Shown: positions 14,831-54,325 of the stretch, piece by piece | Position numbering within the stretch: position 1 is the first letter of the stretch | Layout of the letters: each line of letters starts with the position of its first letter | Source: Amphiscolops sp. MND2022 | Lineage: Eukaryota | Assembly (NCBI GenBank): GCA_964187785.1 | Contig: OZ076414.1 | Span: forward strand, 20,398,001-20,462,000 | Direction: 5' to 3' | Length of the DNA stretch: 64,000 bases | Made by a program: the position numbers and the translations under genes | Notes under the pieces: generated by a model | Databases searched by the model: none | The model's input: the letters and a program-made list of their open reading frames with translations, nothing else | Told to the model about the DNA's origin: nothing

Positions 14831-15695
14831 CTGCAGATCAAAAGCAATCTATGAACCTGTGAAGGTTTTCGGGAAAAAACGTGACTAGAATCATTTCGAA
14901 GGTTCCAGATGGACGCAAGTAAACGAGAGGAAGTGGTCGGGAAAAATCTTGGACAGAGGCGTCGGATCCAAATATGTTTTCTCAGCCAGTATTCCAGAGG
15001 AAATTTAGTCTTAATTCGGGTGACCGGGAATAAGACCTAAAAATTCAAAAGGAATAGAACCTAAGAGAATAGGACCTAAAAAACGGGATTAAGCCTTAAA
15101 AGGATTTGTTTTTCCATGGAAAAAATAGGCCCCTCCGGGGCTCAGTACTATTTCTGCTTTAATCTTTATTTTTTTAAAACAAAAAATCATTAATAAAAGA
15201 ATCATATCTGGAATACCAATACACTCCTGTTTAATCATTACTTAGAGCACAATTAATCACTGTACAAGTTTACACCGCCTTTAATTCTTCTCGGACTAAA
15301 GAAAATATAACTAAGCGTAGACGAAGTTTCGCATTCGCATTTGAATGCAGGCGAAGCTCTCAACGAACGAATAATTAACACTCATTCGCTTCATCTCAAT
15401 GACGTCAGCATACGAATGGATAATTACCACTCGCTCGTTCTATCGCACTAGAATTGAATTGTTGTCGGCAGCTTTCCCACGCTTACACTCACTGCCGAAC
15501 AAAATATCTGAATTATTCAGTAGGACGAAATTTGACGACTGAAAAAAAAAAAGGACCAACTTTGAGGTTACAATAACATTCCTGCTAAAGCAGAAATATT
15601 AAAAACGTTTGAAGGCAGAATTTATTACCAAATCTTCAGAAACAAATCTCCAGCAGAACGAATTGAGGTAATTGGCTCTTCAGATCGACAATGCC

Positions 15696-15990
15696 GCCTG
15701 TGTTCTAGGAACTGTGAGCGACAGAGATGCGTTCGAAGAAATTTATTACATATATTTGAGGAATAGAAAGACAAGTGTTGAATTAAAAAGCTTTTCGAAT
15801 GTAACATCATTCATCATCAGTTAACACTTATTACATATAGCCTAATTTTTTGACCTTTATCTCAAAGCAGGTTTTTAAAAAAAAATTCCACCGGTCGACT
15901 GCATAGTGGCTGGTTTGAGTAGTTTGTTCGTTGTTTTTTTTTACTGGTCTACTGGTATAGTGGCTGGTATGGGGTTCCCTACTTTCGTTG
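15696..15990 (+). repeat. Unclassified ~230-bp 'host' repeat, copy 1 (near-empty reference allele)
   Basis: Colinear with the pieces at 53163-53221, 54134-54162, 58704-58784 and 63769-63786. Confidence 0.8.
15755..15828 (-). mobile_element. 74-bp Penelope-like 3' remnant containing a putative hammerhead ribozyme
   Basis: 11-bp TSD TATTACATATA (15744-15754, 15829-15839). Minus strand reads CTGATGA-T-GAATG/atgtta/CATTC-GAAA-AGCTTT. Confidence 0.65.
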
Positions 15991-16231
15991 CAGACCACAG
16001 TTGTGTGTCTTCTCCCCCCAACATGATGATACACATGGCACTTGATTGATGACGAAGATCCATGATATTGAGGTAATCCACGCAAATAACCTTTCAATTA
16101 CAAACTTCTCAATCATTGATTTCTTTTCCCCATAACAATTTTATAAAATCGGTAGATCTCAAATCATTTTATTTAAGAAGAAATTATTACCTTTCGTAGA
16201 GGTCTTACAAAAATTGCAGTACTTTCCCCAC

Positions 16232-16352
16232 CTAATGTGGAGCATATACGGTGTAGGCACGCTCGCCCTGACCTCGCTTAGCAAGATGGGAACATAAGCG
16301 GCCCCAAGGGGCCGCGGAGTACTACAGGAAATGGGAACATATCCGAGGCATG
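16232..16352 (+). repeat. GC-rich structured cassette, partial copy
   Basis: GCATATACGGTGTAGGCACGCTCGCC...GCGGCCCCAAGGGGCCGC...CATATCCGAGGCA. Confidence 0.8.
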
Positions 16353-18146
16353 CTTTATACTTTGAAAAACTTTAGATATTACTTCCGAAAAAAATATTGC
16401 GTTCATTCCGTACTGTAGGTCTTATTCCCGTTTTTAGGTCTTATTCCCACTTTTTAGGTCTTGTTCCAATTTTTACGTCTCATTCTGCTATTGGGTCTTA
16501 TTCTGGAAAACTGCGAACCATGTTAGGTCTTGTTCCCGTTTCCGATTTAGGTCTTAGTCCGTAGGTCTTATTCCGTTCATCTTAATTCGTCTGAAGATTG
16601 TTCTAATTCAAATAACTGGTGGGATATTTTAGAGCATTTACGTTAGGCCCACTTCCAGTAGTTCTGCTTCTTCAGTCCTTCTCCTATTTTCCTGATTTAA
16701 ATATCCACAAAAAAGTTCGAAAAAACATTCACATCACAACAAACCTCCATCATAATGTCGTACAGATATCTGTAGGGTGGTTTGGACAAAAGTTTCTCTG
16801 ATAATGGAGGACGTTTTATACTCTGCCCGAGTGTCTTTTTGGTTTTTTCGATATTCAATTCAGGCATTTTGAGAATAAATAATGTAAAAAGTGAATGAAT
16901 TTAAAGATCGGGCATTTTTCACTTAAGCATGAAATTATTTGAACCACGGTGATTAGAAAAATCAGAAACGAAATTTTCGATTTCGTCTCCAGGGTAAATG
17001 AGCTTTTTTGTAATTGAAGTAATTGTTTCAATATCACTCTCACACTCGGTCATCGCGAACTGCACAAAGAAAATTGATCATCTGTTGAGAGTGGGGAACT
17101 TTTTCCTTTCCCCCCACACTTTTCAAGATGATGTTTTTGCAATTAATTATATTTCAATTGCGTTTCCAATGAAACAGTTCAGTTTTATATTTATTCTCAG
17201 GGTGATAGTGATTCAGATACAAACTTTGTTCACACTTTTCCCCTATGTACTTACGCATTTTTTGATGAAGAAATCAACACTTTCCGGTTTTGAGTCATCA
17301 ATAAACACTCAATACGAACATAATTAGCCAAATTGTGTGAACAATGTTTTGTTCAAGCGGAAAACTACTCTAATAGTGTGGAGACAACAAAACAAAGGAA
17401 AAGACTTATTCGAAAAAATACTGAATGATATAGTCAAATATAATCCTTTATGTTGAGTTTGTTTTCTTTAAAAAGTGTGGGGGGGAGGAAAAGGAGCCAA
17501 GTGTGGAGCCGTTTTTCCTCTGAAAGGAAGTTTTGTATCTGTATTTGCATATATCTGGACGAGAAGATTTTGAAACTGGGATAATGATACCACTTTAAAA
17601 ATTTTTACCTAGCAGCATCTTTGGGCATTTGAGAGACTGATCGACGATGTCGTGTTCCAATAGGGCATTACTTGGGGGAAAATCAAAGCCCATGCTAACT
17701 TTCAAAAGGTACTTTGTGTATGATTGAGTAGATTATGCTTTGTATAGTCCATTGTAAATAACAATTCAAATGTAGTTTTAGTCGGTGCTTCCTGGAATGA
17801 AAAGCGTCCAACCTTTGTAGTGGCTTTAACTCTTGTGGCTATACGGCCACAGACCTCACGTCGAATAGTCCTGGTTTTGACCACACCCTCTTGTGCGTTC
17901 GGAACTAGGTGAAGTCTTTTTCCGCACAGGATTTCCACATGGAGATTGACGTTATAAGAAAATGACGTTATCAACGAATTTAAAGAATATCCGACTAAAA
18001 ATGTCCCCAAATTGACACGATAGTAGCAAAAAATTCAAGTACTTCTTAAATTAGGATAATTTTATGCATTTTGTATTTTCGTATATTTCCACCCACTGCA
18101 AAATTTCTAGTTACTAAGATGTAGCTTGGAGGAAACCTGATGTTTT

Positions 18147-19070
18147 TAGTCGACGCTTTTCGTGAAAAACGCATACTATAGCACTGCCTTTTCTAAAACC
18201 AACGAAGTGACAGACTTTATGAGCTTTCTAAGCTGTTACGTGTACCGGATATAACGTTCCTGGAGTTTTCAATGTTAAAAACGGGTCTCCCTTTTGATTT
18301 TTTTTTACCGCAAACCGGATAGAACGAATTCCGAATGAAACGTTTCTCGTATATGCTCCCAAAAGTAAAGAGGAGACCAAACGTTCACCCCTGTGGGTTT
18401 TTTCGGCACTATGCAACTTTTTCCGGAAAAAAATTTTTTCTGTAACGCCCAGCAGTCGGCGAACGAAAATTACAAAATGTAGATGAAAAATTCGAAATGT
18501 GCGATTTAAAATGGCCCGACAGATACCGAAAATCGTAGAAGAAGCAGAAAAACGCACACAAAACCCCCCACCCAGCCCGAGAGAGAACACCCCGCCATAG
18601 AATTATCCCCGAAATCGCCGTGTGGTGCCGGCTTGTGGGACGTGTCCGGACTTTGAGAGCGCCGGAACGTTGCCTCGAAGCTCTAACTAAGGAGCCTCCC
18701 CAGACGAATGGAAAAGTCCCTTTCAGGAGACCATTTTGGGATTAAAAACTTCTGTCTAGGTTGTAGTAAGACACTGGTCTCCTGTTCAAGCAATCTAGGC
18801 ATTGTCCCACTTCTATGATGTGCGTCACTAGCCTGACGTTACATTCAAAGTTCGAATATAACGTTCTCAAAGTTCGGATATAACGTTTTCAATGTTTGGA
18901 AGTAACGTTTTCAAAGTTCGGATAAAACGTTTAGAGTTCGGATGTAATGTGTTCAGTATTCGAATGTGACTTTTTCAAAGTTTGGATATAACGTTTCCTT
19001 GACAGTTTGAAGACATTTTGCTATTTTTAAGCCTTAGATACGGCGCCATCTTGGGCCGTTCCCGGCTTGT
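18147..19070 (+). mobile_element. HINE/DINE-1-like element copy F, with unrelated internal sequence and a GGATATAACGTTTTC tandem array (about 18840-19000)
   Basis: TTTTTAGTCGACGC 5' end; GGCGCCATCTTGGGCCGTTCCCGGCTTG 3' end. Confidence 0.7.
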
Positions 19071-21249
19071 TGTTTCTGAAAGTGACCCAAAGTGACAGAA
19101 AAAACTTTGACCGTTTTATGCAGTTTTGGTACGTTTATTTAAAAAATTCGTTTGAATAATCATCTACAGTTAAACGACAAAATTATTTAGCATCTGAACA
19201 AACTTTTTGTTAAGAAATTTTAATGTTTTGCAATAAGAGGCCTTACTTGCTGTTGAGAAAAAAACACTTTGCTGTTTTCGCAACTTTTCACTCGATTTGA
19301 ACAGCTTTTTTGCGGGTTTGAATATCCACGGAGATCGAAGTTTTCGTGAGTATGGAAAACAGAACACACGAAATGTTGTTTTTAGTCATCTGTGAAAAAG
19401 TCAAATGAGACACCTTTCAAGAAAAAATGCCACGAAGGACCCAAAAAGACGAAATTTGGAGAAAGATTTCATTTTTGGTGTGTTCCAAGAGATTTCATAA
19501 TTTTAACAGCCGAACAAAAAGTTAGCATATGATACCAGTGAAAAGTTTTTAAATGAAAAAAGTGCCTAAAATGAACCGAGGAGGTTTCAAAATTTACTCT
19601 CTAGCTGCTGTCCCTACTTTTCAACAACTCGAATTGAAGGAGAAGCCCGACGAGTTGACATACATTGATGATCGCCAATGCTCTGATATTAGCTGAAACT
19701 TTCTGTTGTGACTAGTGACGTCATGAGATGCAGCTTTGTACGGTATACGGTGCTCACCTCTTATTCAGTTTTTATAGTTCTGGCGAGTAATTGAATCTGT
19801 CAATTGACTTCCATTTCGAATTTTAAAAAATTAACTATTTGATTGCTCTTTTTTCTAATATTGAAAACTTTCCGTTCAGCAATGTCGAGTCACTTTGACT
19901 GCAACTTCCCAGCTTCAATTTTTCTAATTTTAGGTTTTGTACTCCCTATAAATGGGAACAACTCGTAGATTATGACGAAATTAAAAACTCGATGGTCAAA
20001 CAAGATTGCCTCTTTAGAAAATACAGACTCCGAAAATCATACGATGTACAACAGAATGCAGTAACGCAAAAGAACGTGCAAAAAAAGCGAATATCAAAAA
20101 GCTAAGTCCTAACCCAACTCCGAAACATATTCACAGGACATTCAGAGCAAAACCTTCCTGCAAATGCAACACCAATGTTCCGTTGTGCCCGATCTTGACC
20201 CTGTAAATAACGATTTTGTGTATCCCACTCATGAGTTCGAAGTTTCAGAATTATTCGAAGAAATGAAAAAGAAGAAAGTTTGGGCGAAGATGGAATAAGC
20301 ATTCAGATGTCTAAATGATGCTCTTGCACAAAAAAAAACATTATACTGCAACATTATTCGACAACGGCATTGGAGGAGGCATAGAAATGCCATCCAAACT
20401 AGAACTACAGCCATTTTGAAAAGACTTGACTACATCGTGTACGAACGAAAACCGGAAGCTAAAAACGAGTCCGTCCAAGTAAGGTGCGGAACAGAACGAT
20501 TTTCCATCGAAGAGTGTTTTTGCCATAGGGCCCTGTTGTTTTGTTCTCATGTACAGCCAATCTGATTCAAGTTCTTCTGCGCGGTTGTGTTGCGTTTTGA
20601 AGGTTTCCGTCTCACTACAGTCGAAAATCGCTTGTTGATTATCGCGCAGTATGATGAATTCTTGCGTTACTCCCAAACAAAAAACATTGAACCCAAAAAG
20701 CAGATATATATACTTTCCCCGTCGAATGCCAGTTAAAACTTTCGCGCGGCGTGGGCCTTCACTTGTTGCCTTTGTTTGTTGTGCGAGATCCTTCGTTGGT
20801 TCATCCGTTTTTCATCTTCTCTGAGAAGAGTGTATGTGAGGTTTGTATCAGCTAAGTCTGCACTAGACCGTCATTGATTGATGTGTAAATTGATCAAAAT
20901 AGAGCGTGTTGATAAGCTTGTGTAAACAAATTTTGCGATCATCGTTTCAGTGAAATTTTCATTCGCGTTTTGAGCTGCGGTTTCATTGGCTGACAATTAG
21001 CGGATAAGCTGACGGAACGGTTTACCAAACCGTGAAAAGGATTTTTCCCGATAAAGATCTTTTCGACAGAGCATGAAGCAATGGCGTGCTCCTATTTTTC
21101 CTGTATTTCAAAACAGCCGAGTTTGTGCAAAGAGGTATTAAAAATATAAATGTTTCCACTATCAAAAGTTTGGATATTGAGTAAAAACTGTCATTTAAGG
21201 AATAATGCAGCCATTGTACTGAAGAGGTCGGCTACGAACATTGTCGGAA

Positions 21250-24000
21250 CAAAAACAAGCAGCGCATGGGTTCCAACTTGATTGAAACGACGGAAGTGGC
21301 TCGCTACAGTGTCCACTATTTCAAAACCAGGTCAAAGCAGTAAATGAAGCGAGAGGTGCACAAAGTCTACAATCTGGACAGTGAGCAAATCGAGGGTTGT
21401 TGAGAAATCGGGACAGTAGTTGGGCCCAGAATGCCGAGTCTGTTCGACAGGACAATGAGAGGTGAGCAAGGCCGCGGTAGTCGAGTCCTCGTTTTTGATG
21501 CTGCTCACAAGCCAGAGGACCTTAAAAACGAACTACCCAATCTACGAATGTGATCTATCTTGATTGGCTCTCTAATAGATGATCATAGGTCACAATTGAG
21601 TTCAATCGGGTTGATTCAGCTTCCATCTTGAGGTTGGGCAAAAATCACCTTCTGGCATTTGAGCCTTCGTCAGCTCTACCGTGTTTTCGAGTTGTGATGA
21701 AGCTGCCTTGCACTCTCCCTTTCCGTGCTTGCAAAGTTTGTTTTTCACAAACTTCTGATGCCTCATTGTCAATCAACCGTTGCCCATTTCGGAACGTTTC
21801 CCAAGAACCACGTCACTGAAACAATTCCGCCCTTATTGAACCGCTTGCTCACCTTCTAACTTAACCATGTCTTAATTTGTTTTCAGTTGACCGGAAACGA
21901 ATGTCGAATCACCCACACTACCGGCATTTGTGACTAATCCTCGTCAGTGTTAAAGCAAGTGTGGGTGGTCAATTGATGCCTTGAATTGAGCTCACATAGA
22001 TGGAAGTGAGAGACAGTCAAATCCTCTGGCTGCTTCATATTGATGCATGTGAAAATCAATTGCCGGCGTTTGAGTGAACCTTCGTGCCTTGACTCGAACC
22101 TTGCACGTCAACACTTTTCATCTAATTTGTGAGCAAGAAAAGTAGGATAAACGACTTGCGAACAAACCGGAGAAGTTGGGAAAGGTCAGATTGGAAGCAT
22201 ACTTCTCGACAAACTTCGAGGCAAATATCTCGAAAGTAGACTTGCCGTGAGCCGAATGGATTGATTAGTTCTTGATGTAGATAGCAGTGGAAAGAATAAA
22301 GGCCAGAACAGCTGTGGAACCCCCCATTGTTGCCATTAAGCATCGCGTCATGCCAGTAACAGTGCCCCAAGCTTCCTCAATTTGTCCATTTTCCTCGGGC
22401 ATGTGTGGCGCAAAGAACACATGTTAATTGCCATTGGATGTGCAAGAGTTCCTGAGCTGCTTCTATTTGTTTCAAAGAGTCCGTCTGAGGCCTATGAGCC
22501 AGGCTCCCCACATCGATGACAGGTCGTTGCAATGTTGCCGTCACCACATTCTCCGACCTCGCCGGGTACACTCAATCAAAAGGGCTGTAGCACTCGACGA
22601 AACCCACGTCACAAAAAAACCATTGCTAGGATTCCTGCTGAACGGGTCCGAACACGTCAGTGTGAACGAAAAACCGTTTGTTTTTTTACCCCTGAGCCAC
22701 ACGAGTTTGGGATGGATGTTGATTTTTTTGTCCAACAGATGTTGAAGTTCTCTCTTATTCCAGAGGTTAAGATGCCCATGCCATCGATCTCGTGCTGCAA
22801 CCTAGACTCATCGTGCCAGCTGCTGTGCCCCAATCTTTGATACCAGTGTTTGGTATAAAGAGATATCATGTCGCCACAGGTTGAACCATCACAGTGAAGA
22901 GTTCGATTTTTGACAACAATGGCAACACAGCATCGTGGGCCCTGTTGATGGCTGGATTGTCATAGAACAAGATTTTTGTTCCACGTCCGTCAATTCTTCA
23001 GTGAAACAGATTCTTCGCGTACGATGGCACTAGGAAAGCATCAGTAAACAAAATTGGCACGTGTTTTATCTGACCCAGCACCACACTGTCCGACATAGCT
23101 GATCTCTGAACGATTGCTGTTAGCGTTGCAAACATTCACCAAGCAACCTTCGTCCAGCTCAGAGAGAAGCTCCCTGTTCTTAATCATGAAGCCTCGTCCC
23201 GGAAGTAAATGTGGTGCTCGATGCTTCTGCTGTCGCAGCCTTCAGTGCTGAAGGATTCGAAGCTGAAAAAGTATGCTGATGAGTAGATGCTGGAATTGAC
23301 CTGAGCCATATTCTCTTCATTAGCTTCGTTGGTGTCTCTACTTGCAAGATGAACACTGATGATCCTTCGGTTCGGACCATTGTTGAAGCAAGCAGTTCGT
23401 CTGATACCCATTTCTGTCCTCAGCTCGAATCAGTACATTTCCACATTCAAAATACTTCAAAAAGATCCTTCTGCTGAATGAAATGCTGTCAACGACGTCT
23501 CACTGCAACCTCCCATGCCCCTTGTTGCTGAAACGTTGACCAAAACCTGCATCATCGCGTACTACCTCTTCGCTCTGCCGATATTGAAGACTGCCACAAT
23601 ATTTAACCATTAAGTATCATCTCTGATCTGCGACAGCTTCCCCAGCTTAGACGAAATCAATTTCAGCCCAACTAAGTTAGTCACTCACTTTCTCCTTTTA
23701 CTGTCATATTTAGACCAGTGAGATGAGTCATCAATGTATGAATCCGACATTGTCAAAGCGGCCCAAGCTGCAGTCCCATCCTGATCATGGTCTCTGATGA
23801 AGTTGATGCTTGCCTTGTCAAGGCAGTGAACCAGCTCGTACAACACCATGTGAAGCAGTTTGGTCAACTTTGCTTCTTCTCCATCGAGTTTGCCACGTTC
23901 GTCATTCGTGTGCTTGCCTTTCAGTGTATAGACTTCAGTGTTTCGAACGTTTCCAAAAAGGTGGTGAAATCGTCCTCTCGTCCAAGGAACACCAGCTTCT
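21250..24000 (-). mobile_element. Ty1/Copia LTR retrotransposon, heavily decayed internal region, LTRs not found
   Basis: Motifs in Copia order on the minus strand: gag-like LVHCLDKASINFI, protease-like CDSRSIEHHI..RD, pre-integrase WYQRLGH, integrase DVFGP..GFVECYS and PEENG..TRCLM..AIYIKN, then an RT-like QKRGLDY. Confidence 0.7.
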
Positions 24001-24829
24001 TTTGTTGAGAGCTTCGTGGTGCTTTCATCACGATCTTGTTGGTGAAGCTGTGATCAGCCTGATAGATTGTAAACTGCTGATACTAAAAGATTTCAAAACA
24101 GGCGTTGGTATCAGTGAAGAATTGATTTTAAATGTTTTTCTAACAATCAAACTTGGTTACTGTTTTTTCAAAGGCAACTGATCGTAGAAATAGTTAAGCA
24201 TCGGATTTATATGGCACTGAAACAGGTATGTGTAAGTCACCAAAAGTGTGCAGTATCAAATGCAGGATGAGGCATCGTACAAACAAAGTGAGTATGAAAC
24301 ATCATCTGGCAGGTACTTGAACGTCCGAGGTTAATGATCACAATTCAACCGATCCTGCTTTGCAAGCAGTACGGCAAACCTTGAAAAGTTTCTGAAGTTT
24401 GGGGTTTGTTTGGAAAATTGTCTATCGTAAAGTTTGGAAATTTTTCTAGGTTCGTCAAGCAAGTTTTACCTGTTCTCGAAATTGAAACGTTTTTGCACTG
24501 TGTTCACAGCAAACGAAGGTTCGAATAACCTTTGCGTACTTCATATGCAGTTGCTGTTTGCAAAGAGTACAAACAATCTAGTGAATCAAACCTGAAGGCT
24601 TGAGGCATTTAGGAGTTTCACCGGTTATGTTGTTTTTTGTCATTCATCAACCTATTGCAGGAATACCACATTTATATGGATGTCACACTCCCCAAAAGGA
24701 GGAGGAAAGAAGAGACACCAAAGAAAAGGAACAACAAATATGGTAAAATATTTCTCCTAATTCAGACAATTCATTGAGAAGAAGTCACTAGGTTATGTTT
24801 CGTCTTTCTGCCTAATTGAAGCAACAAAT

Positions 24830-27720: not shown

Positions 27721-28249
27721 TGACAATACACAGAAATGAAATTATTTGATTCGTTTATCACATCAATTAGGCATTTAGTGTGCCGCCTTGAACCTTAACC
27801 CCTGTTTTGTGTCATATTTTATTTTGCACAAATAACCTTTCGAGAATCCATTCTTTATTCAGCTATTTTAGCTGGAAAAGACACACAACTTCAATGCTGA
27901 TAAGACGAGATTAACGTCCAGAATCGGAAATGACATACTAAGTTGACGTGAACAACGTCTGAATCTCCAGAGGTTATTCCCAAAAAAAAGATTGTTTTAG
28001 ACGTCGTTGTTCCCGTTTTTGATTTAGACGTTTTTCCGTAGACGTTGTTTCCGCTCACGGTTTGAAAAAATGGAAAAATTATTTGTTTTAAATTAAATTG
28101 TTAAGAAATAAACAAAATACATTCCTTTTTACTTTTGTGCAGTACAATATATTCATTTTTTGTTCCATTGTATTTGTAGTTTTGTTCCTCATGTCTCGGC
28201 CAACTGTTATATAGTATTTGGATTTAATTACAAGTGTGGAAAAATCGAT

Positions 28250-30485: not shown

Positions 30486-30796
30486 TGTGACAGGGCAAAA
30501 ACAAACTGTTAACGTGAAACAAGAAGCTAAAAGAAATACCCAATTAAGAAGAACAATGTGATTGACAAACTAAATTTAATTGAATGATTGATACAAACTG
30601 TACAACCAATTGTTATTGTTATTACTAGTACACAATAAGATAACACTACCAGTTAACATTATAGACCATTTCATAATGGGTCGAACCAGTTTGCCAAAAG
30701 GTCTAAACGGAAGTAGAGTGTTGCTTCTCCTTCTTTTCTAAAGAACCCAGAACAATCTTCCTAGCCGAATTATCAAACTGTCGCAACACTATAACA
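30486..30796 (+). repeat. Gypsy 5' LTR
   Basis: TG...CA, 311 bp, followed by the PBS. Confidence 0.92.
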
Positions 30797-42700: not shown

Positions 42701-45700
42701 ACCATTGAAATAAGACAATCCATGGAAATGGAACGAAACACACGAAAAATCATTCAATGAGATTGAAAAAAGTATGAACAAAAAAAACTGAATATAGGCC
42801 ATTTTAAAAGAAGCAACCCAATCCGGATTATTTGTGACGCTAGTAAATCTGGACCTGGAGCAGTATTACAGCAACAAGATGATATAGGCTGGCGACCAAT
42901 CCACTTCGCATCAAGGTTCCTAACAACTTTGGAAGAAAAATATTCAATATACGAACTTGAATTGTTGGCCGTTGTCGGGTCAGTGGAACACTTCAAATAT
43001 TACTGATATAGCATTAAATTTCAAATAGTGTCGGACCACGAAGCGTTAGCAGAAGTTTTGAAGGGAAACAAAAACAACAAAACAAATTCAAGCCGATTAA
43101 CACGCTGGGTAGACCGCCTGCTACCGTTTGAATTTGAAATATTCCATGCACCTGGAAGAACAATTGGGTTCGCAGACTACTTGTCCAGACACCCTTCACA
43201 AATACACGGAGAAAGTAAAAAGGCAGACGAGTTGTGGAATAACTGGTTCAAAGTGAACCATAAAAAAAATGTAATTAGCGTTTTAGCAAAAGAAGTAAAC
43301 GAACCAATCAGAGGGCGTAGACGACAAAAATTACAAGGCGACGATGAACGCAGCAAAATTACACAACTGCCACATTTATGTGAACAAACAGAACGCAAGC
43401 ATTTTGCAAAGATTGGACAGGGCAGCTCTACAAACGCTTTAACAGGTGCTGCACACTCCGCTCGATATTTAATCCAAAGCTAGAACTAGCAAATAAAATT
43501 GGTGAAAACATGTTAGCCTCAAGCTATCAGGATAGCGAAAACCTACAAAAAATTATTGTCGTGATGAAAAACCCAACAAAAGGGAAAATTATAGCGCTAG
43601 ACAGTCCATGGCGAGAAAGATTCTCGTTCCCTTCATTAGACAAAAACAACTTTCTATATCTTGATGACCGCTTAGTAATCCCAAAATTACTCCAATGCCC
43701 CATTAAAATCCCCTTACACTGGGGACACCCAGGTCGGGACCAAATGCTCCGACGAATTGCTGACTTTTGGTGGCCAAAAATCCATCGGGACATCGTCCTA
43801 CTTACAAAGACCTGTAAAAAATGCCAAGAATCCGGTAAGTCAATAAAACCTATATTAAAACAAAAACAATTTGGCAAGTTACCTACCTCAAATAAAACAA
43901 ATGAAGAAATTGCTATAGACTTCGCAAGCCCTTTCAAAGTCGCAAATAGCTCCAAAAAGTATTTAATTGTGTCAAGAGACTGTAAGACCGGCTTGCCAGA
44001 TGCAAAATTACTTCGAACCCCAACAACTAACAAAGTAATTGAATTCCTAACTAATTATATAGCAAACAACAACAGCATTCCACGACAAATAAGAACGGAC
44101 CCGGGGACAGCCTTCACCAGCAAGAAGTTTAAAGAAATATTTTATAAAACATATAACCTACCCCATAACAGACCACAGGGGAAATGGAAAAGTCGAGAGG
44201 CTTATCAGAACAATAACCGAAATACCTAGGACCAATAAAAGAATAGTACTACAAAAGGGTAACACCGAATTATCCGAATTTTTATATACACTTAGAAGTA
44301 CACCAAAAGTAAATAAAATAACACCCGCCGAACTACAACTTGGGCGAAAAGTGACTACTGTAAAAGATATAATTACCACCAAACCTCAAACAATCTACAC
44401 TGTTTCAGAACTGGACGACAAACTGGAATTGGAAATGAGCGATTTTCAGGCAGACCAAGACTCAGAAATCCTGGTCAGGGAACGGGTGAGGGAATCCAAA
44501 CTCGAGAACGACTACAACTGAAACAAGGGCCGAATTACAATAGAAACCCCGCGCACAGTCACGCTACAAGAACACAACAAACGGAAGACAACAACATACA
44601 GTAAAAGGGAGATAGAGAAAGCAAAAGAGCAAGAAGACATGAGAAAAGCAAAACAGCCACTTCACAGTGAAAAGCAGAAAACCACAAAAGTGAACAAGAC
44701 AGCAGAGAACAAGCAACCAACGAAACAAAAACTAAAGAGAAATCCATCAAAATTCAAACGCTTAGCAAAATGGCAACATTTGCTACAGGAGTCAGAACAT
44801 GAGGAACCAATCAAAAGAAAAGAACCCATAAAAGCGACGGTGACACGGGAGAAAGAGAAGATGAAAACAGAACCAGAAGAAGGAAATGAACAAGAACAAA
44901 GCAGTTCGACTATAGAGAGACCACAAATAATCCGAAATGCACCAAATACACAATAAGATAACACTACCAGTTAACATTATAGACCATTTCATAATGGGTC
45001 GAACCAGTTTGCCAAAAGGTCTAAACGGAAATAGAGTGTTGCTTCTCCTTCTTTTCTAAAGAACCCAGAACAATCTTCCTAGCCGAATTATCAAACTGTC
45101 GCAACACTATAACATGGCGCTGCGCAGCGAATCCACGGGCATGAACCAACCATCAGCAATTGCAGTATTCCCCAATTATTGGGCGGACGCTTCCAAACCA
45201 CCACAATTAGAGTGAGAAAAATGGATTGATCTTTTCGAAGTCTCACTAATGTCGAAAAGTAACTTTTCAATTACAGAATTAACAAAAACGACAGAAGTCA
45301 AAGAAAAAAGTTTGATGGATGATATTGAAGAGCCCACCGCCACAAAGAAGGCCATCAGTGTACTATTTCTTGCTCTGGGAATGGCAGCCAGAAAAACAAT
45401 TGCAAATATGTTTCCAAACACAAATATTGCGAGAATATCCCTGACAGATCTGTTGAAAAACTGTAAAGACTGCTTTGAGAAGCCCAAAAATGAGACATTA
45501 GATCGATACAAAATTCTGAGCCGCAAACAACATGAAGGTGAAACATTAAAACAGTTCTGGAACAAACTGAACGGACTCGCCGCAAAATGCAGTTTCGGAG
45601 GAATTACGGAAATCCTTCTGGAAGATGTATTTATTGTGAATATGACGAATAAAGAGGTACAGCAAAAATTGTGCACTGAGCTCGAAACAACTGTACAAGA

Positions 45701-48700
45701 AAATACTGAGTTTGTAATTGCTTACGAAGAAGGCACTATACGGCAAAAATCGTTCGACAAATTGGAGAAGATGAATGTAAAATCAGAAGTAGGCGAAAAA
45801 AATAACGTAAACCAAAGTGCAAATAAAAGATGGGGACCCACCAAGAAATGCTTCAGTTGCGAAGCTCCATTTGCAACACAACATTTAAAAGAATGCGAGG
45901 CGATGGGAATAACTTGCATGAAATGTGGAAAAAAGGGCCACTTTGCGAAGTGTTGCCAAACCAAAGGAGCATGAAACTTTGCAAAAAGCCGAAAGTCATG
46001 AGACCCCTACATCAGCAAATTCAGAGAATCGATGATTGGGATGAAAGTAGCAACGATTCCACAACCAAAGAAGATAAACTGGTGTTGACAATAGAAGGAG
46101 ACGAAAATGGGCAGTTCACGGTGTCAGGCACTATGAACGGAAACTCATTCAAAACAATGGAAGACTCGGGGTCACCCGTCACATTATTTGAAAGAGACGA
46201 AATAAAGAAGATAATGCAGAGGAAAACCCTATTCATATGCGAACTACCGGAAGGCGAAGATTATATAGACTTCAATAAACGAAAATTGAATCCATTGGAA
46301 TCTATTGTATTCTGTCAACTAGACGTGGAGAAGAGCAAATTACAGAAGGCAAGAATATTGGTTGCAGCAAAGGGAGCAAAGTCATTGACTGGACGCGATT
46401 GGCTAACTGCCTTCAACTACCAATTTGTCTCGCCCATTCTGAACGAAGGCACAAACGCTATTTAGAAAGTTACTACAAACTACTCACTACAAAGAAAAAC
46501 AAATAAAACAAATAAGGCGGGTAAACAAACTGAATTAAATGAGAACAAGAATATTAACTAATACATAAAACTACAGAAAGAATTTAAAGAATTGTTTGAA
46601 CGACCAGGAAAATTGATCGGACACGATGTAAAAATCGAGTTCAAAACAAACGCAAAAATAACACAACAAAAAGGCAGAAGAGTGCCTATTCAATTACAAG
46701 AGGCAGTAGAGGCAGAAATTAATAGACTACTAGAAGAGGGCCACATAAAACGAATTACCGAAGTAACCGATAGGGAATTCATACAACCTTTGGTAATCTC
46801 CGTGAAAAGAGACAAAAGTGTGAAAATAGAACTTGACGCGAGAGCATTAAATAACGAGATTATTAAAGACAAATACCAAATGCCAAATTTTGAGCACTTA
46901 GTTGATATGGTGGCCGAACAGCTAGATAAAGAAGGAAACGAACCAGCCTTCTACATGTCACTCGAAATGCACTATGCATATGGACAAGTCCAATTAGATA
47001 AAGAAACGGCTAAACATTGCAACTTTCAAATAGCCGGTGAGAAAGCCACCAGAACATACCGTTTCATTACCGGAATCTACGGATTAACGGTAATGCAAAC
47101 CGAATTCCAAAAAGCTATGGACATGGAACTATCAAATATACCCAACACGTATGTATTCCTTGACGATATCATGATAGTAACTAAAGGAAATCAAGAAACC
47201 CATTACAAAGCAGAACGGAAAATACCAACAAAGTTAAATGAGGCAAATATCAGACTAAAGTGGGAAAAATGCAAACTTGCACAAAGTGAAATCGAGAGGT
47301 TAGGGTATAAGTTAACACAAACTGGAATCCAACCAATAAATACAAAAATACAGGCCGTAACAGATAAATCAAAACCAAAAGGGTTAAAAGAGTTGCGATC
47401 TTATCTAGGGGCAGTAAACCAATTAAACAGGTTTATTCCAAATTTAGACAAACTATGTTTCCCATTACGACTACCATTGAAATAAGACAATCCATGGAAA
47501 TGGAACGAAACACACGAAAAATCATTCAATGAGATAAAAAAAGTATGAACAAAAAGTAACTGAATATAGGCCATTTTAAAAGAAGCAGCTCAATCCGGAT
47601 TATTTGTGACGCTAGTAAATCTGGACTTGGAGCAGTATTACAGCAACAAGATGAATTAGTCTGGCGACCAATCCACTTCGCATCAAGGTTCCTAACAGCT
47701 TTGGAAGAAAAATATTCAATATACGAACTTGAATTGTTGGCCGTTGTCGGGTCAGTGGAAAACTTCAAATATTACTGATATAGCATTAAATTTCAAATAG
47801 TGTCGGACCACGAAGCGTTAGCAGAAGTTTTGAAAGGAAACAAAAACAACAAAACAAATTCAAGCCGATTAACACGCTGGGTAGACCGCCTGCTACCGTT
47901 TAAATTTGAAATATTCCATGCACCAGGAAGAACAATTGGGTTCGCAGACTACTTGTCCAGACACCCTTCACAAATACACGGAGAAAGTAAAAAGGCAGAC
48001 GAGTTGTGGAATAACTGGTTCAAAGTGAACCATGTAAAAAAATGTAATTAGCGTTTTAGCAAAAGAAGTAAACGAACCAATCAGAGGGCGTAGACGGCAA
48101 AAATTACAAGGCGACGATGAACGCAGCAAAATTACACAACTGCCACATTTATGTGAACGAACAGAACGCAAGCATTTTGCAACGATGGGACAGAGCAGCT
48201 CTACAAACGCTTTAACAGGTACTGCACACTCCGCTCGATATTTAATCCAAAGCTAGAACTAGCAAATAAAATTGGTGAAAACATGTTAGCCTCAAGCTAT
48301 CAGGATAGCGAAAACCTACAAAAAATTATTGTCGTGATGAAAAACCCAACAAAAGGGAAAATTATAGCTAAACAGTCCATGGCGAGAAAGATTCTCGTTC
48401 CCTTCATTAGACATAAACAACTTTCTATATCTTGATGACCGCTTAGTAATCCCAAAATTACTCCAATGCCCCATTAAAATCCCCTTACACTGGGAACACC
48501 CAGGTCGGGACCAAATGCTCCGACAATTTGCTGACTTTTGGTGGCCAAAAATCCATCGGGACATCGTCCTACTTACAAAGACCTGTAAAAAATGCCAAGA
48601 ATCCGGTAAGTCAATAAAACCTATATTAAAACAAAAACAATTTGGAAAGTTACCTACCTCAAATAAAACAAATGAAGAAATTGCTATAGACTTCGCAAGC

Positions 48701-49909
48701 CCTTTCAAAGTCGCAAATAGCTCCAAAATGTATTTAATTGTGTCAAGAGACTGTAAGACCGGCTTGCCAGATGCAAAATTACTTCGAACCCCAACAACTA
48801 ACAAAGTAATTGAATTCCTAACTAATTATATAGCAAACAACAACAGCATTCCACGACAAATAAGAACGGACCCGGGGACAGCCTTCACCAGCAAGAAGTT
48901 TGAGGAAATATTTTATAAAACATATAACCTACCCCATAACAGACCACAGGGGAAATGGAAATTCGAGAGGCTTATCAGAACAATAACCGAAATACTTAGG
49001 ACCAATAAAAGAATAGTACTACAAAAGGGTAACACCGAATTATCCGAAGTATTATATACACTTAGAAGTACACCAAAAGTAAATAAAATAACACCCGCCG
49101 AACTACAACTTGGGCGAAAAGTGACTACTGTAAAAGATATAATTACCACCAAACCTCAAACAATCTACACTGTTTCAGAACTGGACGACAAACTGGAATT
49201 GGAAATGAGCGATTTTCAGGCAGACCAAGACTCAGAAATCCTGGTCAGGGAACGGGTGAGGGAATCCAAACTCGAGAACGACTACAACTGAAACAAGGGC
49301 CGAATTACAATAGAAACCCCGCGCACAGTCACGCTACAAGAACACAACAAACGGAAGACAACAACATACAGTAAAAGGGAGATAGCGAAAGCAAAAGAGC
49401 AAGGAGACATGAGAAAAGCAAAACAGCCACTTCACAGTGAAAAGCAGAAAACCACAAAAGTGAACAAGAGAGCAGAGAACAAGCAACCAACGAAACAAAA
49501 ACTAAAGAGAAATCCATCAGAATTCAAACGCTTAGCAAAATGGCAACATTTGCTACAGGAGTCAGAACATGAGGAACCAATCAAAAGAAAAGAACCCATA
49601 AAAGCGACGGTGACACGGGAGAAAGAGAAGATGAAAACAGAACCAGAAGAAGGAAATGAACAAGAACAAAGCAGTTCGACTCTAGAGAGACCACAAATAA
49701 TCCGAAATGCACCAAACTACTATGGCAACCTCATAATGACATGCAGAATGAATAAAGACGAAAAAGACAAACCAGAAAAAATCACCATCTTTAGTGACGA
49801 CAATTATAGATGAAACACCACAACACAGAATACACAATAACCTAAACAGTAGTCCAACTCTTTTTCAGTTTACCCTAACCCACGCCGAGCTTGCCCGAAA
49901 AAGGGGGAA

Positions 49910-50221
49910 TGTGACAGGGCTCAAACAAACTGTAAATGTGAAAAAAAAGAAGCTAAAAAAGTACTTAATTAAATAGAACATTCTGATTGACAAACTAAAC
50001 TTACTTGATTGATTGATACAAACTGTACAACTAATAGTTATTGTTATTATTAGTACACAATGAGATAACAGGGCCAGTTAACAATATAGACCATTTCAAA
50101 ATGGGTCGAACCAGTTTGTCAAAAGGTCTAATCAGAAAAAGAGTATTGCTTCTCCTTCTGTTCTAAAGAACCCAGAACAATCTTCTTAGCCGAATTATCA
50201 AACTGTCGCAACACTATAACA
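49910..50221 (+). repeat. Gypsy 3' LTR
   Basis: TG...CA, 312 bp, preceded by the polypurine tract; roughly 89% identical to the 5' LTR by eye. Confidence 0.92.
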
Positions 50222-50420
50222 CCATGTCTCCGAAAAATGTTCAAAAACGCTGCACCAAATAGATCAGTAGTGATTTGAAGAGTAATTACAAGCAATTGCA
50301 ACTGAAAGATCGATTGTTCCCATTATCCATCTACTCAAAGCTACAAGATATCCTATTCCTGACAGATATACAAATTTATTCTTCAAATCCCTTTTGATGC
50401 GCCATACTTTGCACAATTTC
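50222..50420 (+). mobile_element. Continuation of the 28.2-30.5 kb CR1-type LINE beyond the Gypsy insertion
   Basis: NVQKRCTK*ISSDLKSNYKQL...LQDILFL continues the peptide VCWFDNVSNSK that precedes the 5' LTR. Confidence 0.65.
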
Positions 50421-50429
50421 GTCAGTCAG

Positions 50430-52036
50430 GCTTTTTGACCATTTTGATCTTCTCTACTTCTGATTTTCACTGTTTTTGGGTGTTAGGTTTTTTGTTGCGT
50501 CTACAAATTTAATTAAATTTTTCATCCAATCTTTATCATTGGTCTCTCATATGCTGTGTCTCCTGCATTCAAAAAGAAAGTGTCTCGATGTTTCTTCGAC
50601 TTTTTGGCCTTGACAATTTAGAGAAGGCACTAGACTGCACTGATTGGCGAAATTTGCAAAGTCTATGCATCTGTCCAGGAGAGTTTTTTGTATGGTTTTC
50701 TGCATCTCTAGAGGACAAGACATAGGCATAGCGATGGAAGAAATTTTCACTTGCTTCACTTGCACTGGTATCAAGGCATTGTGTTCAGAGTTTTTAATTC
50801 TGCGGTTCCACTTGAACTCGATGTACTTGATCACATCTGCTCTGCTATAGTCTTTTCTTTCACTATGCGTGATCTTTTCGAATTCGTTCGTTATTGTAAT
50901 GTCTTGTTTGATTTTTTTGTCAAGTGTTTCTAGTGTGCATCTCCTTAAATCGTCTTTCGATTTCATCAATTTTGCAGAATCTAGCTGTTATCGTCTCGCA
51001 ACGTAAAGCTATTGGCGGTGTTCCTGTAATAATTTCCGTCACGCTGTTGTTGCTAGATGTGGTTACTCCCAGTGCTTGCTTGATTGTCTTGTTGATTGCG
51101 CTATTCAGGGTATTAAGGTTTCTTAGTGCCCATATGGAGGCTGCATACAAAACTTTTGGAATTAAAACCTGATTGAAAAGCCTGATTAGCGTTTGCGGAC
51201 TCAACCCCCACTTCTGTCCTACAAGTTTATCCAGTGTCTGGAAATAAAACAAGGCTCGTCCCTTCATAACATTTGCATGTGATTTGATTGGCAGCTTGGA
51301 GTCAAATGTTACACCAAGTATTTTACAGCTTTCCAAAATTTTCACAGCTTCAGTTCCGATCTTGTGAGATTTTATGAAGGTAGCATCTACGTTAATTGGC
51401 ACTAGTACCGTTTTGTCCACATTCATTTTAAATCTCCAATTCGTGCACCAATGAAAAAACTTCAGAAGGGCTGCTTCTGTTCTTTGGTGTACTTCTGTCG
51501 TTGAACTTGCGCTTATCAGGAGATTTCCATCATCTGCGAATTTGAACTTAACGGCATCGATTTCAATAAAACATTTCTGAGACAAAGATTATAAACAGAA
51601 GTGGTGATAGGTTCCGCTCTTTGTGGAACTCCGTTATCTGTCTTGAATTCGTCGCTCTGATATTCTCCAATTTCCACATATAATTGACGATTTCTGAGGA
51701 AGCTTTCAGTCAGACCTAATATGTTGCCTGATTGAGCTTCAATAGTAAGCCATTTATCCAGACTGAGTCGAAAGCTTTCTCCAGATCTCCAGAGTAGAAG
51801 CATGTACAGATGTCGTACAGTACTTTTTTGTTTTCGAACTCCCTCTTGTTCCTTGTCGAGAATTCCTTCGTGTTCAGCGAGAGCTCTAATTCTGGATTCC
51901 AGTAACCGTTCAAGAGTTTTCCAACGTAGCTGGAAACTGTGATTGGTCGGTATAATGATGGAGTGTAGTAGTTTGATTTTCCTGACAAAATGTATGATTG
52001 GTAGACTTGATTACACTTTTGAACAATATCTTTGTT
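50430..52036 (-). mobile_element. 5'-truncated non-LTR retrotransposon (I/Jockey-group-like), RT plus C-terminal zinc knuckle, frameshifted
   Basis: YRPITVSSYVGKLL, DLEKAFDSVW, GVPQ, KFADD, and C-terminal CQGQKVEETSRHFLFEC. Confidence 0.85.
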
Positions 52037-52046
52037 TCAGAGATCA

Positions 52047-52544
52047 GAGTGTACGCCTTTGATCTAATTGCTTGGGTCTAATGGAATTAGATCTAACTGT
52101 TAGGTCTAACTTTCAGATCTAATTTTATCTAAAATACTTAGGTCTAACCCCTTAATTATCTAATATGTGTTCTGAAAGCGAAAATATAATAGGCATATGC
52201 GATGTATGCACGCTCGCCCTCACCGTCGCAAAGACCAGCTCCAACTACGATCGCTTCGCGATCTCCGTTCCCGCTAGGTCTTTGCTCCTGTTCGACCTCG
52301 CTTAGCAAGATGGGGATATAAACGGCCCCAAGGGGCCGCGGGGCACTAGAGGAAATGGGGACATATCCGAGGCACGTTTTATACTTTATATGACTTTTTA
52401 ATTTTAGATCCTAATTGACTTTTTTTCTCAAATTAGATCAAATTAGAAGAGATTTTTAGACCTGATTATTTAAATCAAATTATTTAGATCTCAGTTTTGC
52501 CCCCTCTCTTAGATCTATTTCAATAGACCTGATTCCACGTAGCC
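52047..52544. mobile_element. MULE-like MITE with TTAGATCTAA subterminal repeats, carrying the GC-rich cassette
   Basis: 10-bp direct repeat TCAGAGATCA at 52037-52046 and 52545-52554; inverted arrays of AGATCTAA/TTAGATC. Confidence 0.75.
52193..52380 (+). repeat. GC-rich structured cassette, most complete copy (~190 bp)
   Basis: GGCATATGCGA...GATCGCTTCGCGATC...CGGCCCCAAGGGGCCG...GGACATATCCGAGGCACG. Confidence 0.85.
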
Positions 52545-53221
52545 TCAGAGATCATCCTCGTCCATTAAGATCAGATAATTTGAACACAGAAAACCACGTG
52601 CGACAATCTGTAAACATAGTTTCTTTACCCGGACGATGTCTCTAATCATACGACTACCTAGAAACTTGAATTTTGAAGATCCTCAAGGTCTGAAAGAACG
52701 ACGTTTGAAATACCCCCGGGCGTATTTCGAGAACAACTAGAATGAATTTGTTAGTGACACCTGGAAATAATAGCGGTATCCACAGCATCTTTTGACTGGG
52801 GAGTTTCTGACGTCTAACAGTGGAAGGACGAATCCATAATAGTACTATTACTAATACAGTCCTAGAAGTCTACAACCGAAATCTTTGTTCGAACAATAAT
52901 TATTTCTCCTCACGCAATATTGGATAATATGTATAATATATTTGTTAGTCAGCAACAAATATATTTTTTGAAAATTTGAATACATTGTTTTACGTCCCCG
53001 TTCCCACTCGCCCTAGTGGGGTTTCGCATTGGTGAGACCAGTATTTCTGCCATAGTTCTTCATATCGTTCAATTTCAGTCCATTGTACGAGAGCGTTGGT
53101 CGTGCATTTCATTTATTTCGATGCGATCTCGATGTGAATTTCCACGGTATTAAAGATCAGAGGCCTGTGTTGTAGGAGCTGTGAGCGACAGAGATGCGTT
53201 CGAAGAAATTTATTACATATA

Positions 53222-54123
53222 TTACAGGGCACTAGCTCCAGTCAAATACAAGAAAAACATCATTGAGGGCACAATTTATAGAATCTTTAATGCCACCTCG
53301 ACCTGGGAAAACTTCACTGAAGGCATCAAAAAAGCGATCGAGACTTGGGAGAAGAATCAATACCCACCTCAATTCTACCAACCCATTCTTCGTCAGACGT
53401 TAGATAAAATTCTTAACGGAAAATCAAGTTGCCATCCGGAAAGATCAGCATGTGATAGTGGAAGAAACCCGCCCCTCTTTCTTCAATACCGCGGTAATAA
53501 AAGCGATCAATTCTCGAAGAAGTTACGAAGAACTGTGGAAGTCTCAACGATTTTCACAACCCGAAAGCTCAAAACCGCTCTTCCATCGCTGAAGTCACCT
53601 TTCCCTACGGTGTTCCTGAGTAACGTCGTCTACCAAATTACTTGTCCTGGGTGCCAATCCAGCTACGTCGGGCAAACAACCCGCCACTTGACGATGAGAA
53701 TTCAGGAACACGCCAGACCAGCCAGCCATGTGGGAAGCCACCTGAGGAACTGCTAGCAAACGATGCAAGATGCTGATGTTAACATAATCGACAGAACCAA
53801 TAGCAACAACCAATACCAAGCTACTCACTCTGGAAGCCCTTCACATATCCAGGAGAGCGCCGTCCATCAACCAGAAGGAGGAATACAGGACGCGCGAACT
53901 CACACTGAAAGTGTGATTTGTCATTGTTCCGATAAATCATTTGGCTTGATAATCTGTGTATCTATCCCATTTGTTTCAACTTTTTTCCACTTAATGGTGC
54001 TCTTTATATTTTTTAAAAAATTCCTACAACTTTTGCATTTGTATGTTTTTTTAGATTCTGATGATGGTCTACAAGACCGAAAACGTTTAAGTCAACTTTT
54101 CGATATCAATCTTCTTTTTCATA
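53222..54123 (+). mobile_element. Penelope-like element, 5'-truncated, GIY-YIG endonuclease plus 3' hammerhead
   Basis: YRALAPVKYK...NVVYQITCPGCQSSYVGQTTRHLTMRIQEH (GIY-YIG), tail LEALHI...INQKEEY, and 10-bp TSD ATTACATATA (53212-53221, 54124-54133). Confidence 0.9.
54054..54093 (+). ncRNA. Type I hammerhead ribozyme (PLE-type, minimal)
   Basis: GATT-CTGATGA-T-GGTC/tacaa/GACC-GAAA-ACGT-TTA^-AGTC: conserved core, stem II, palindromic stem III (AACGTT), stem I GATT/AGTC. Confidence 0.75.
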
Positions 54124-54325
54124 ATTACATATAGCCTATTTTTTTACCTTCATTATCACAGCCTAATTGTTGTGATAAACTTATTAAATAAATGAGATAT
54201 GGTGGTGTGCCGATAAGAAGAAGCCCTAGTGGATTTCAGAGATCGACCGAAGATGACGGGGGGATCACAATGCAGAATGTACAACAAATGACGAGGCATC
54301 GCAAAGCATTTGCAAAAAGTGTGAT

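What the first reader, a model, noticed from the sequence alone, without database searches (positions are those of the whole stretch)
15696..54133. Two different hammerhead-bearing Penelope-like insertions at the same nucleotide of two copies of one repeat, in opposite orientation
Seen: both copies of the ~230-bp repeat read ...GCGTTCGAAGAAATTTATTACATATA|GCCTA when reconstructed. Copy 1 carries a 74-bp insert (15755-15828, TSD TATTACATATA, hammerhead on the minus strand). Copy 2 carries a 902-bp GIY-YIG PLE (53222-54123, TSD ATTACATATA, hammerhead on the plus strand). The two inserts share no obvious sequence apart from the ribozyme core, so they look independent. Established: PLEs carry a GIY-YIG endonuclease and hammerheads, and are generally not regarded as strictly site-specific. 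Inference: a sequence-specific PLE endonuclease that targets a mobile repeat and makes a symmetric staggered cut.
Basis: partly seen in the sequence, partly recalled or inferred. Interest (0 to 1): 0.78.

Follow-up and report, generated by a model that had tools for sequence, protein, structure and literature searches.

The report
Two Penelope insertions, one LINE site
Two unrelated, truncated copies of Penelope-like jumping genes really do sit at the same nucleotide of two copies of an abundant LINE, in opposite orientation. A genome-wide check finds no dedicated targeting, so this is an ordinary nested insertion at an AT-rich soft spot plus a coincidence.

Summary
Both junctions, both target-site duplications (12 or 11 bp, and 10 bp) and the opposite orientations are exactly as described.

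The host "repeat" is the 3' end of an abundant non-LTR retrotransposon whose copies are 5'-truncated. The shared site is the stop codon of its ORF (...ATTACATA-TAG).

The 74-bp insert is the last ~72 bp of PLE family A, which has about 50 3' ends in the genome and encodes RT plus GIY-YIG. The 902-bp insert is a 5'-truncated copy of family B, which has about 24 3' ends. Their endonucleases are 41% identical. Both carry the Penelope-type minimal hammerhead, read by motif; Rfam finds nothing.

The interpretation of a sequence-specific endonuclease aimed at this repeat is not supported:
- 201 exact empty sites exist.
- Among all copies with an exact flank, only the two window copies hold a PLE at this site.
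- 25 other independent family A flanks and 18 family B flanks are heterogeneous and only moderately AT-rich.

The site lies in one of four AT-rich patches of the LINE tail. These patches also attract MITEs and other elements. Published biochemistry on a full-length Poseidon PLE (AT-rich nicking and extension of both strands) explains either orientation at one staggered cut.

Unexplained: the only two occupied copies lie 37 kb apart.

The parts
15673..15754 (+). LINE copy 1, left part (LINE 1425-1506): the last codons of the LINE ORF (...AFEEIYYI), ending just before the stop codon
   Evidence: blastn to L006:54-1807, 97.6%; ORF reading in L006
15743..15754 (.). left copy of the TSD TTATTACATATA (copy 1)
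   Evidence: direct reading
15755..15828 (-). 5'-truncated PLE family A: its last ~72 nt. 15756-15826 is 100% identical to family copies; the end bases are ambiguous by 1-2 nt
15787..15820 (-). Penelope-type minimal hammerhead core of A: CUGAUGA (15820-15814), bulged U, helix II GAAUG/CAUUC, GAAA (15796-15793), palindrome AAGCUU (15793-15788)
   Evidence: direct reading against the features listed in PMC4209133; no Rfam hit
15828..16068 (+). right TSD copy (15828-15839) and LINE copy 1, right part (stop codon and 3' UTR, LINE 1495-1733)
53162..53221 (+). LINE copy 2, left part (LINE 1447-1506); the left TSD ATTACATATA is 53212-53221
53222..54123 (+). 5'-truncated PLE family B. 53222-53224 is an extra TTA, 53225-54120 is B sequence (96% to L032), and 54121-54123 is an extra ATA in place of the family's terminal C
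53625..53726 (+). N-terminal half of the GIY-YIG domain of B; the ORF is broken by a stop at 53754-53756
   Evidence: Pfam PF01541, 17.7 bits, below the cutoff; ORF list
54058..54088 (+). minimal hammerhead core of B: CUGAUGA (54058-54064), bulged U, helix II GGUC/GACC, GAAA (54079-54082), palindrome AACGUU (54082-54087)
   Evidence: direct reading against PMC4209133; no Rfam hit
54124..54163 (+). right TSD (54124-54133) and continuation of LINE copy 2 up to the next nested insertion
   Evidence: local alignment
58691..58784 (+). further piece of LINE copy 2 (LINE 1524-1617), lying beyond a ~4.5-kb nested insertion

Best explanation
These are two independent target-primed insertions of 5'-truncated copies from two related but distinct canonical (RT then GIY-YIG) Penelope-like families. 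Each landed in an independent, short, 5'-truncated copy of an abundant LINE.

Both used the same staggered break in the AT-rich patch around the LINE's stop codon. The + strand was nicked at ATATA^G. The - strand was nicked 10 nt (family B) or 12 nt (family A) to the left.
- For B, the - strand nick primed reverse transcription.
- For A, the + strand nick did, which gives the opposite orientation.

The endonucleases are not site-specific. They have the moderate AT-rich preference already described for PLEs. The LINE tail offers only four such patches, and it is the most abundant part of an abundant repeat. The identical nucleotide is therefore a local soft spot plus coincidence, not homing.

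Shown: junctions, TSDs, family membership, heterogeneous targets elsewhere, and no further PLE at this site.
Inferred: which nick primed which insertion, and that a PLE protein made both nicks.
For: - Junctions and TSDs.
- Host element: RT motif YLDD, an ORF ending at the site, variable 5' truncation, at least 1373 candidate copies.
- Family A: RVT_1 at 50 bits plus GIY-YIG, 50 3' ends, diverse flanks and head-to-tail junctions.
- Family B: 24 3' ends, variable 5' truncation points, and TSDs of about 10-13 bp at unrelated sequences.
- The first 12 nt of the target are 71% (A) and 75% (B) AT, against a 61% background, with no shared motif. The LINE tail has only 4 patches with 12-mers of at least 11/12 AT, and the site patch is one of them.
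- Survey of the site: 201 exact empty sites. Of 43 left-flank non-G variants, only the two window copies hold PLEs; two hold a TA-duplicating MITE and the rest are substitutions. The 35 right-junction variants are substitutions or small local duplications.
- The other interruptions in 30 LINE copies are MITEs, not PLEs.
- Literature: a purified full-length Poseidon PLE nicks AT-rich DNA (ATT) on both strands and extends both (PMC11167929). PLEs have moderate target preference and variable TSD length (PMC8557442).
Against: - The only two PLE-occupied copies found among about 245 exact-flank copies lie 37 kb apart in one window. For a random pair of copies I estimate this at roughly 1e-3, even allowing for the visible clustering of LINE copies.
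- Families A and B are small (50 and 24 ends), so two hits on one nucleotide of one repeat is far above a uniform expectation.
- A simple weight matrix built from each family's other flanks ranks the exact observed registers only 46th (A) and 380th (B) of 682 positions in the LINE tail. Neighbouring registers of the same patch rank in the top 8.
- The survey needed exact 15-25-mers, so diverged LINE copies were not examined.
Confidence: 0.68

Rival explanations
1. A real sequence-level hot spot. The endonucleases of this PLE clade (A and B are relatives) share a marked, though not exclusive, preference for the motif around (T)TATTACATATA^G. They cut it with a fixed stagger, and either nick can prime.
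For: - The + strand nick is identical and the - strand nicks are only 2 nt apart, in two independent events by two small families.
- Three LINE copies show small local duplications at this very site (L004, L118, L124), which could be scars of abortive nicking.
- Two other B targets contain TGTAAT, the reverse complement of the site's ATTACA.
Against: - There are no further PLEs at 201 exact empty sites or among the variant junctions.
- None of the 43 other A or B flanks resembles the site as a whole.
- A sequence-level hot spot does not explain why both occupied copies are neighbours.
Confidence: 0.2
2. The site is a fragile or exposed spot for many mobile elements and breaks, through DNA structure or local chromatin. 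PLE reverse transcriptases used nicks that were not made by a motif-reading endonuclease. The locus around copy 2 is a regional landing pad.
For: - A TA-duplicating MITE sits at the TA of the same ATA|TAG in two other LINE copies (L007, L097).
- L022 and L074 are interrupted at neighbouring patches.
Against: - The TSDs of 10-12 bp are exactly those of ordinary family B insertions elsewhere, so the PLE's own endonuclease suffices.
- There is no direct evidence of fragility.
Confidence: 0.1
3. One ancestral insertion that was later duplicated and inverted.
For: The two copies lie only 37 kb apart.
Against: - The inserts belong to different families, each with dozens of copies elsewhere.
- The TSD lengths differ.
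- The LINE copies have different truncation points and unrelated flanks.
Confidence: 0.01

Closest known systems
Canonical EN+ Penelope-like elements of the Penelope/Poseidon type (e.g. Penelope of Drosophila virilis, PAc of Anolis carolinensis)
   Same: - RT followed by a C-terminal GIY-YIG domain with Cys/His residues inside the core.
- Minimal dimer-type hammerhead near the 3' end.
- 5' truncation, head-to-tail junctions and variable TSDs of about 10-13 bp.
- Moderately AT-rich targets.
- Published both-strand nicking and extension fits insertion in either orientation at one cut (PMC11167929, PMC8557442, PMC4209133).
   Different: Family B carries a PHD finger in its RT region. No biochemical data exist for these families. 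Clade assignment by phylogeny was not done here.
Target-specific PLEs: the (TA)n bias of Neptune/Naiad/Hydra, the (CA)n bias of Chlamys, and the 28S rDNA-specific PLE-X of spike mosses (PMC8557442)
   Same: These show that PLEs can be targeted. The site here ends in a short TA run (ATATA).
   Different: In those families most copies share the target. Here 1 of about 50 and 1 of about 24 copies do, and no (TA)n appears in the other flanks. No CX2-5CxxC linker motif is seen in the stretch upstream of the GIY-YIG core that I read by eye.
Site-specific non-LTR retrotransposons (R2, NeSL, SLACS/CZAR)
   Same: They insert at one nucleotide of a repeated target, with defined nicks on both strands.
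   Different: Those elements occupy a sizeable share of targets and are rarely found elsewhere. Here fewer than 1% of targets are occupied, and more than 95% of the element copies lie elsewhere.

Membership tests
Penelope-like elements (canonical EN+) | RT followed by a C-terminal GIY-YIG endonuclease in one ORF | tested here: met
   Family A: RVT_1 at 50 bits (cutoff 29.6) plus GIY-YIG at 21.6-23.9 bits (cutoff 22.6). Family B: GIY-YIG at 17.7-19.3 bits, below the cutoff, but 41% identical to A over 148 aa with E=2e-31.
Penelope-like elements (canonical EN+) | 5' truncation, variable TSD, head-to-tail (pseudo-LTR) arrangements | tested here: met
   B copies start at positions 4, 171, 228, 329, 348, 518, 558 and 689 of the query and have TSDs of about 10-13 bp. 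The A 3' end is followed by the A 5' sequence in 7 loci. There is a tandem array with a 1701-bp period.
Penelope-type minimal hammerhead (Cervera and de la Pena 2014) | [quoted passage not shown] | tested here: met
   All five features can be read in both inserts against the list in PMC4209133. Helix II differs between the families but stays paired (GAAUG/CAUUC versus GGUC/GACC). Self-cleavage was not tested.
Rfam hammerhead families | covariance-model score at or above the gathering threshold | tested here: not met
   No hammerhead hit at gathering score or at E<=10. This is expected for motifs without a helix III hairpin.
Site-specific retrotransposon | most copies of the element sit in the same target sequence | tested here: not met
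   25 other A flanks and 18 other B flanks are all different.
Site-specific retrotransposon | a substantial share of target copies is occupied | tested here: not met
   2 PLE-occupied copies against 201 exact empty sites plus about 75 substitution variants.
Non-LTR (LINE) retrotransposon, for the host repeat | RT ORF, variable 5' truncation, common 3' end, no LTR | tested here: met
   YLDD motif, truncation points from 253 to 1478 with a common 3' end near 1805. The C-terminal ORF has no Pfam, NCBIfam or PDB hit. Its CCHC and RPD...D motifs, read by eye, suggest an RLE-type domain; this is not confirmed.

The most novel reading that the evidence does not exclude
The stop-codon patch of this LINE is a genuine preferred substrate of a Poseidon-like PLE clade. 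The protein, acting as a dimer, makes a fixed 10-12-nt staggered pair of nicks there, and either nick can prime reverse transcription. The two window insertions would then be natural, in vivo evidence for the symmetric both-strand cleavage so far seen only in vitro.
Probability: 0.18. Interest if true: 0.45.

Novelty: new member of a known kind. Interest (0 to 1): 0.24.

Why it matters
As it stands, this is routine nested transposon structure. Two small Penelope-like families with the family's usual ribozyme and endonuclease have inserted into a common LINE tail.

Its modest value is as a clean natural example. One staggered break was used in both orientations by two PLE families, which fits the recent in vitro result that a full-length PLE protein nicks and extends both DNA strands. 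The empty site is a ready-made substrate for a nicking assay.

If such an assay showed real preference, it would give PLE endonucleases a defined target for mechanistic work. The genome-wide data here argue against homing.

Tried and rejected
1. Rfam at gathering score on the whole window, and at E<=10 on both insert regions, gave no hammerhead. The motif was then judged against published min-HHR features.

2. A MAFFT alignment of 25 host loci timed out and produced nothing. No consensus of any element was built, and L006 served as the reference copy.

3. Weight matrices built from the other A and B flanks were used to rank positions in the LINE tail. The sample is too small and the register too uncertain: the observed registers rank 46th and 380th of 682, while the same patch ranks in the top 8 in neighbouring registers.

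4. Public runs were checked for presence/absence alleles of the young A insertion. Only 4 runs from one study exist, all short repeat-dominated contigs, and no contig bridges the insert, so this was uninformative.

5. Naming the host ORF by Pfam, NCBIfam, PDB sequences and the ESM Atlas gave only unnamed retroelement-like clusters.

6. A tblastn search for further PLE coding sequence in the window found none besides B, so the window is not PLE-rich.

7. The idea that PLE-LINE association is general was checked. LINE tails lie within 1.5 kb of 9 of the 29 other A loci but only 2 of 29 B loci, at varying distances and orientations. One other A copy (L063) is inside a LINE, at coordinate 1437. 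No fixed relation was found.

8. A template-switch (chimeric cDNA) origin was considered and dropped. It cannot give the antisense A insert, and ordinary TSDs explain both junctions.

Those flanks were not read.
Full report
**What is there**

- In copy 1 a 73-74-bp insert (15755-15827/8) is flanked by TTATTACATATA. That is 12 bp, or 11 bp if the T at 15828 is counted as insert.
- In copy 2 a 902-bp insert (53222-54123) is flanked by ATTACATATA (10 bp).
- Both duplications end at the same base, directly before GCCTA.

**The host repeat**

The two window copies share only about 88 bp as aligned, which kept both TSD copies (about 77 bp for the empty site). Genome searches show that this is the 3' end of a very abundant element:

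- The 60-mer left flank has at least 1373 candidate matches, the best 40 of them 100% identical.
- Aligning 30 loci to L006 gives a unit of at least 1.75 kb (L006:54-1807) with a common 3' end and variable 5' ends.
- The unit begins in a reverse-transcriptase YLDD motif.
- It carries a 334-aa ORF plus a last short frame ending ...AFEEIYYI-stop.

The insertion site is therefore the stop codon of this LINE-like element: ATA|TAG, LINE coordinate 1506.

The C-terminal ORF has no Pfam, NCBIfam or PDB match. Its CCHC and RPD...D motifs, read by eye, suggest a restriction-like endonuclease domain, but that is not confirmed.

In the window, copy 1 covers LINE 1425-1733 and copy 2 starts at LINE 1447. 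The flanks outside the LINE are unrelated. These are two separate LINE insertions.

**The inserts**

The 74-bp insert matches the last 71 nt of a family I call A at 100%.

- In other copies the sequence continues upstream into an ORF with RVT_1 (50 bits) and GIY-YIG (21.6-23.9 bits).
- A pattern for its 3' end finds 50 places in the genome.

The 902-bp insert is a 5'-truncated copy of family B, 96% identical to L032.

- There are 24 3' ends in the genome.
- The GIY-YIG ORF is broken by a stop in the window copy.
- Another copy shows PHD plus GIY-YIG.

The two endonuclease regions are 41% identical, and the last ~72 nt of both elements are colinear. They are different families of one PLE group. 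This rules out a single ancestral insertion that was later inverted.

**The hammerheads**

Rfam finds no hammerhead at any threshold I could use. Both inserts nevertheless show every feature that Cervera and de la Pena list for the minimal, dimer-type hammerheads of metazoan PLEs (PMC4209133):

- CUGAUGA;
- one extra nucleotide before helix II;
- a G10.1-C11.1 pair closing helix II (GAAUG/CAUUC in A, GGUC/GACC in B, so different sequences that stay paired);
- GAAA;
- a palindrome directly after it (AAGCUU in A, AACGUU in B).

The motif is on the minus strand in copy 1 and on the plus strand in copy 2, as reported. Self-cleavage is untested.

**Is the site a dedicated target?**

1. Targets of A and B elsewhere:
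   - 25 independent A flanks and 18 independent B flanks are all different.
   - B copies with both junctions resolved have TSDs of about 10-13 bp in unrelated sequences.
   - The first 12 nt of the target are 71% (A) and 75% (B) AT, against 61% in the window, and no motif is shared.
2. Occupancy of the LINE site:
   - The exact 29-mer spanning an empty site occurs 201 times.
   - The exact 24-mer left flank followed by anything but G occurs 43 times.
   - Most of those 43 end in TAA rather than TAG. I did not read these; I take them to be a stop-codon substitution.
   - I read all the T and C cases. Besides the two window copies they are LINE sequence variants (L001, L091-L096), or a MITE with terminal inverted repeats and a TA duplication that sits at the TA of the same ATA|TAG (L007, L097).
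   - Right-junction patterns for 10-, 11- and 12-bp duplications gave 35 places. Apart from the two window copies, these are point substitutions in uninterrupted LINE copies or small local duplications.
3. The other interruptions in 30 LINE copies are MITEs with 8-10-bp duplications, not PLEs.

So there is no enrichment of PLEs at this site genome-wide, and neither family is aimed at it.

**Why the same nucleotide, then?**

The LINE tail of 330 bp has only four patches in which a 12-mer reaches 11/12 A+T. The patch ending at the stop codon is one of them, and the whole 1.75-kb unit has only 25 such 12-mers. The other patches are hit by other elements:

- Copy 2 carries further nested insertions near LINE 1538 and at LINE 1617.
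- L022 is interrupted near 1521 and L074 near 1590.

PLE endonucleases are described as having moderate target preference with variable distance between the two nicks (PMC8557442). The one full-length PLE protein studied in vitro prefers AT-rich DNA (an ATT motif) and, unlike R2 or L1, nicks and extends both strands (PMC11167929).

Under target-primed reverse transcription the two junctions imply the following:

- Both events had a + strand nick at ATATA^G.
- Both had a - strand nick 10 nt (B) or 12 nt (A) to the left.
- For B the - strand nick primed; for A the + strand nick primed.

This polarity is inferred, not shown.

**What stays odd**

The only two occupied copies found lie 37 kb apart. 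LINE copies are visibly clustered: about a fifth of the first 100 listed empty sites have a neighbour within 64 kb. Even so, I estimate the chance that two random copies are neighbours at about 1e-3. The two families are also small.

Neither the coincidence reading nor a sequence-level hot spot explains the proximity. The window holds no other PLE coding sequence.

The survey also depended on exact 15-25-mers, so older, diverged LINE copies were not examined.

For these reasons I keep about 0.2 on a real hot spot and 0.1 on a general fragile or exposed site.

**Limits**

Public runs were uninformative: one study, with short repeat-dominated contigs.

**Verdict**

This is an ordinary nested insertion of known kinds of elements, with a small unexplained coincidence.

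Noticed in passing
L007:1559-2625 and L097 (G000:C1786:428980-429270): A MITE with terminal inverted repeats (CAGYCGAACTMGGATAAAAGAAAC...) and a TA duplication sits at the TA of the same ATA|TAG stop codon in two other LINE copies. The two MITE copies differ by several changes and an indel, so they may be independent hits.
   Followed up: partly
L057:1501-3129 (window coordinates about 65116-66744, just beyond the window end) versus window 53995-55622: A 99.9% identical duplicate lies 11 kb downstream. It covers the last 129 bp of PLE B, the TSD (one substitution, ATTACATATG), the LINE piece and at least 1.47 kb of the next nested element. It could be a recent segmental duplication, a 5' transduction by the downstream element, or an assembly artefact.
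   Followed up: partly
L001, L004, L008, L010, L013, L021, L022, L027, L030 (LINE coordinates about 950-1530): LINE copies are riddled with MITEs of 240-920 bp that have inverted ends and 8-10-bp (once 15-bp) duplications. Several carry GGGTGG...CCACCC ends and repeated GGTCGAA motifs.
   Followed up: partly
L004:1559-1600, L118, L124: There are small local duplications or triplications of ACATAT/ATTACATAT-like units exactly at the stop-codon site in three LINE copies. They could be slippage or scars of abortive nicking.
   Followed up: no
L038:911-2176; window 54311-54460 (+) and 63249-63449 (-): The family B ORF has a PHD finger (Pfam 24.8 bits) upstream of GIY-YIG, as earlier notes on this genome report for PLE RTs. 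PHD-like stretches of other nested elements in the window cross-match it at 30-39% identity.
   Followed up: partly
G000:C2:38861199-38866324: Four family A 3' ends are spaced exactly 1701 bp apart: a tandem array of a shortened A unit.
   Followed up: no
L063, L066, L073, L074, L077, L079, L080, L083: LINE tails lie within 1.5 kb of 9 of the 29 other family A loci but only 2 of 29 family B loci, at varying distances and orientations. L063 is a second A copy inside a LINE, antisense, at LINE coordinate 1437.
   Followed up: partly
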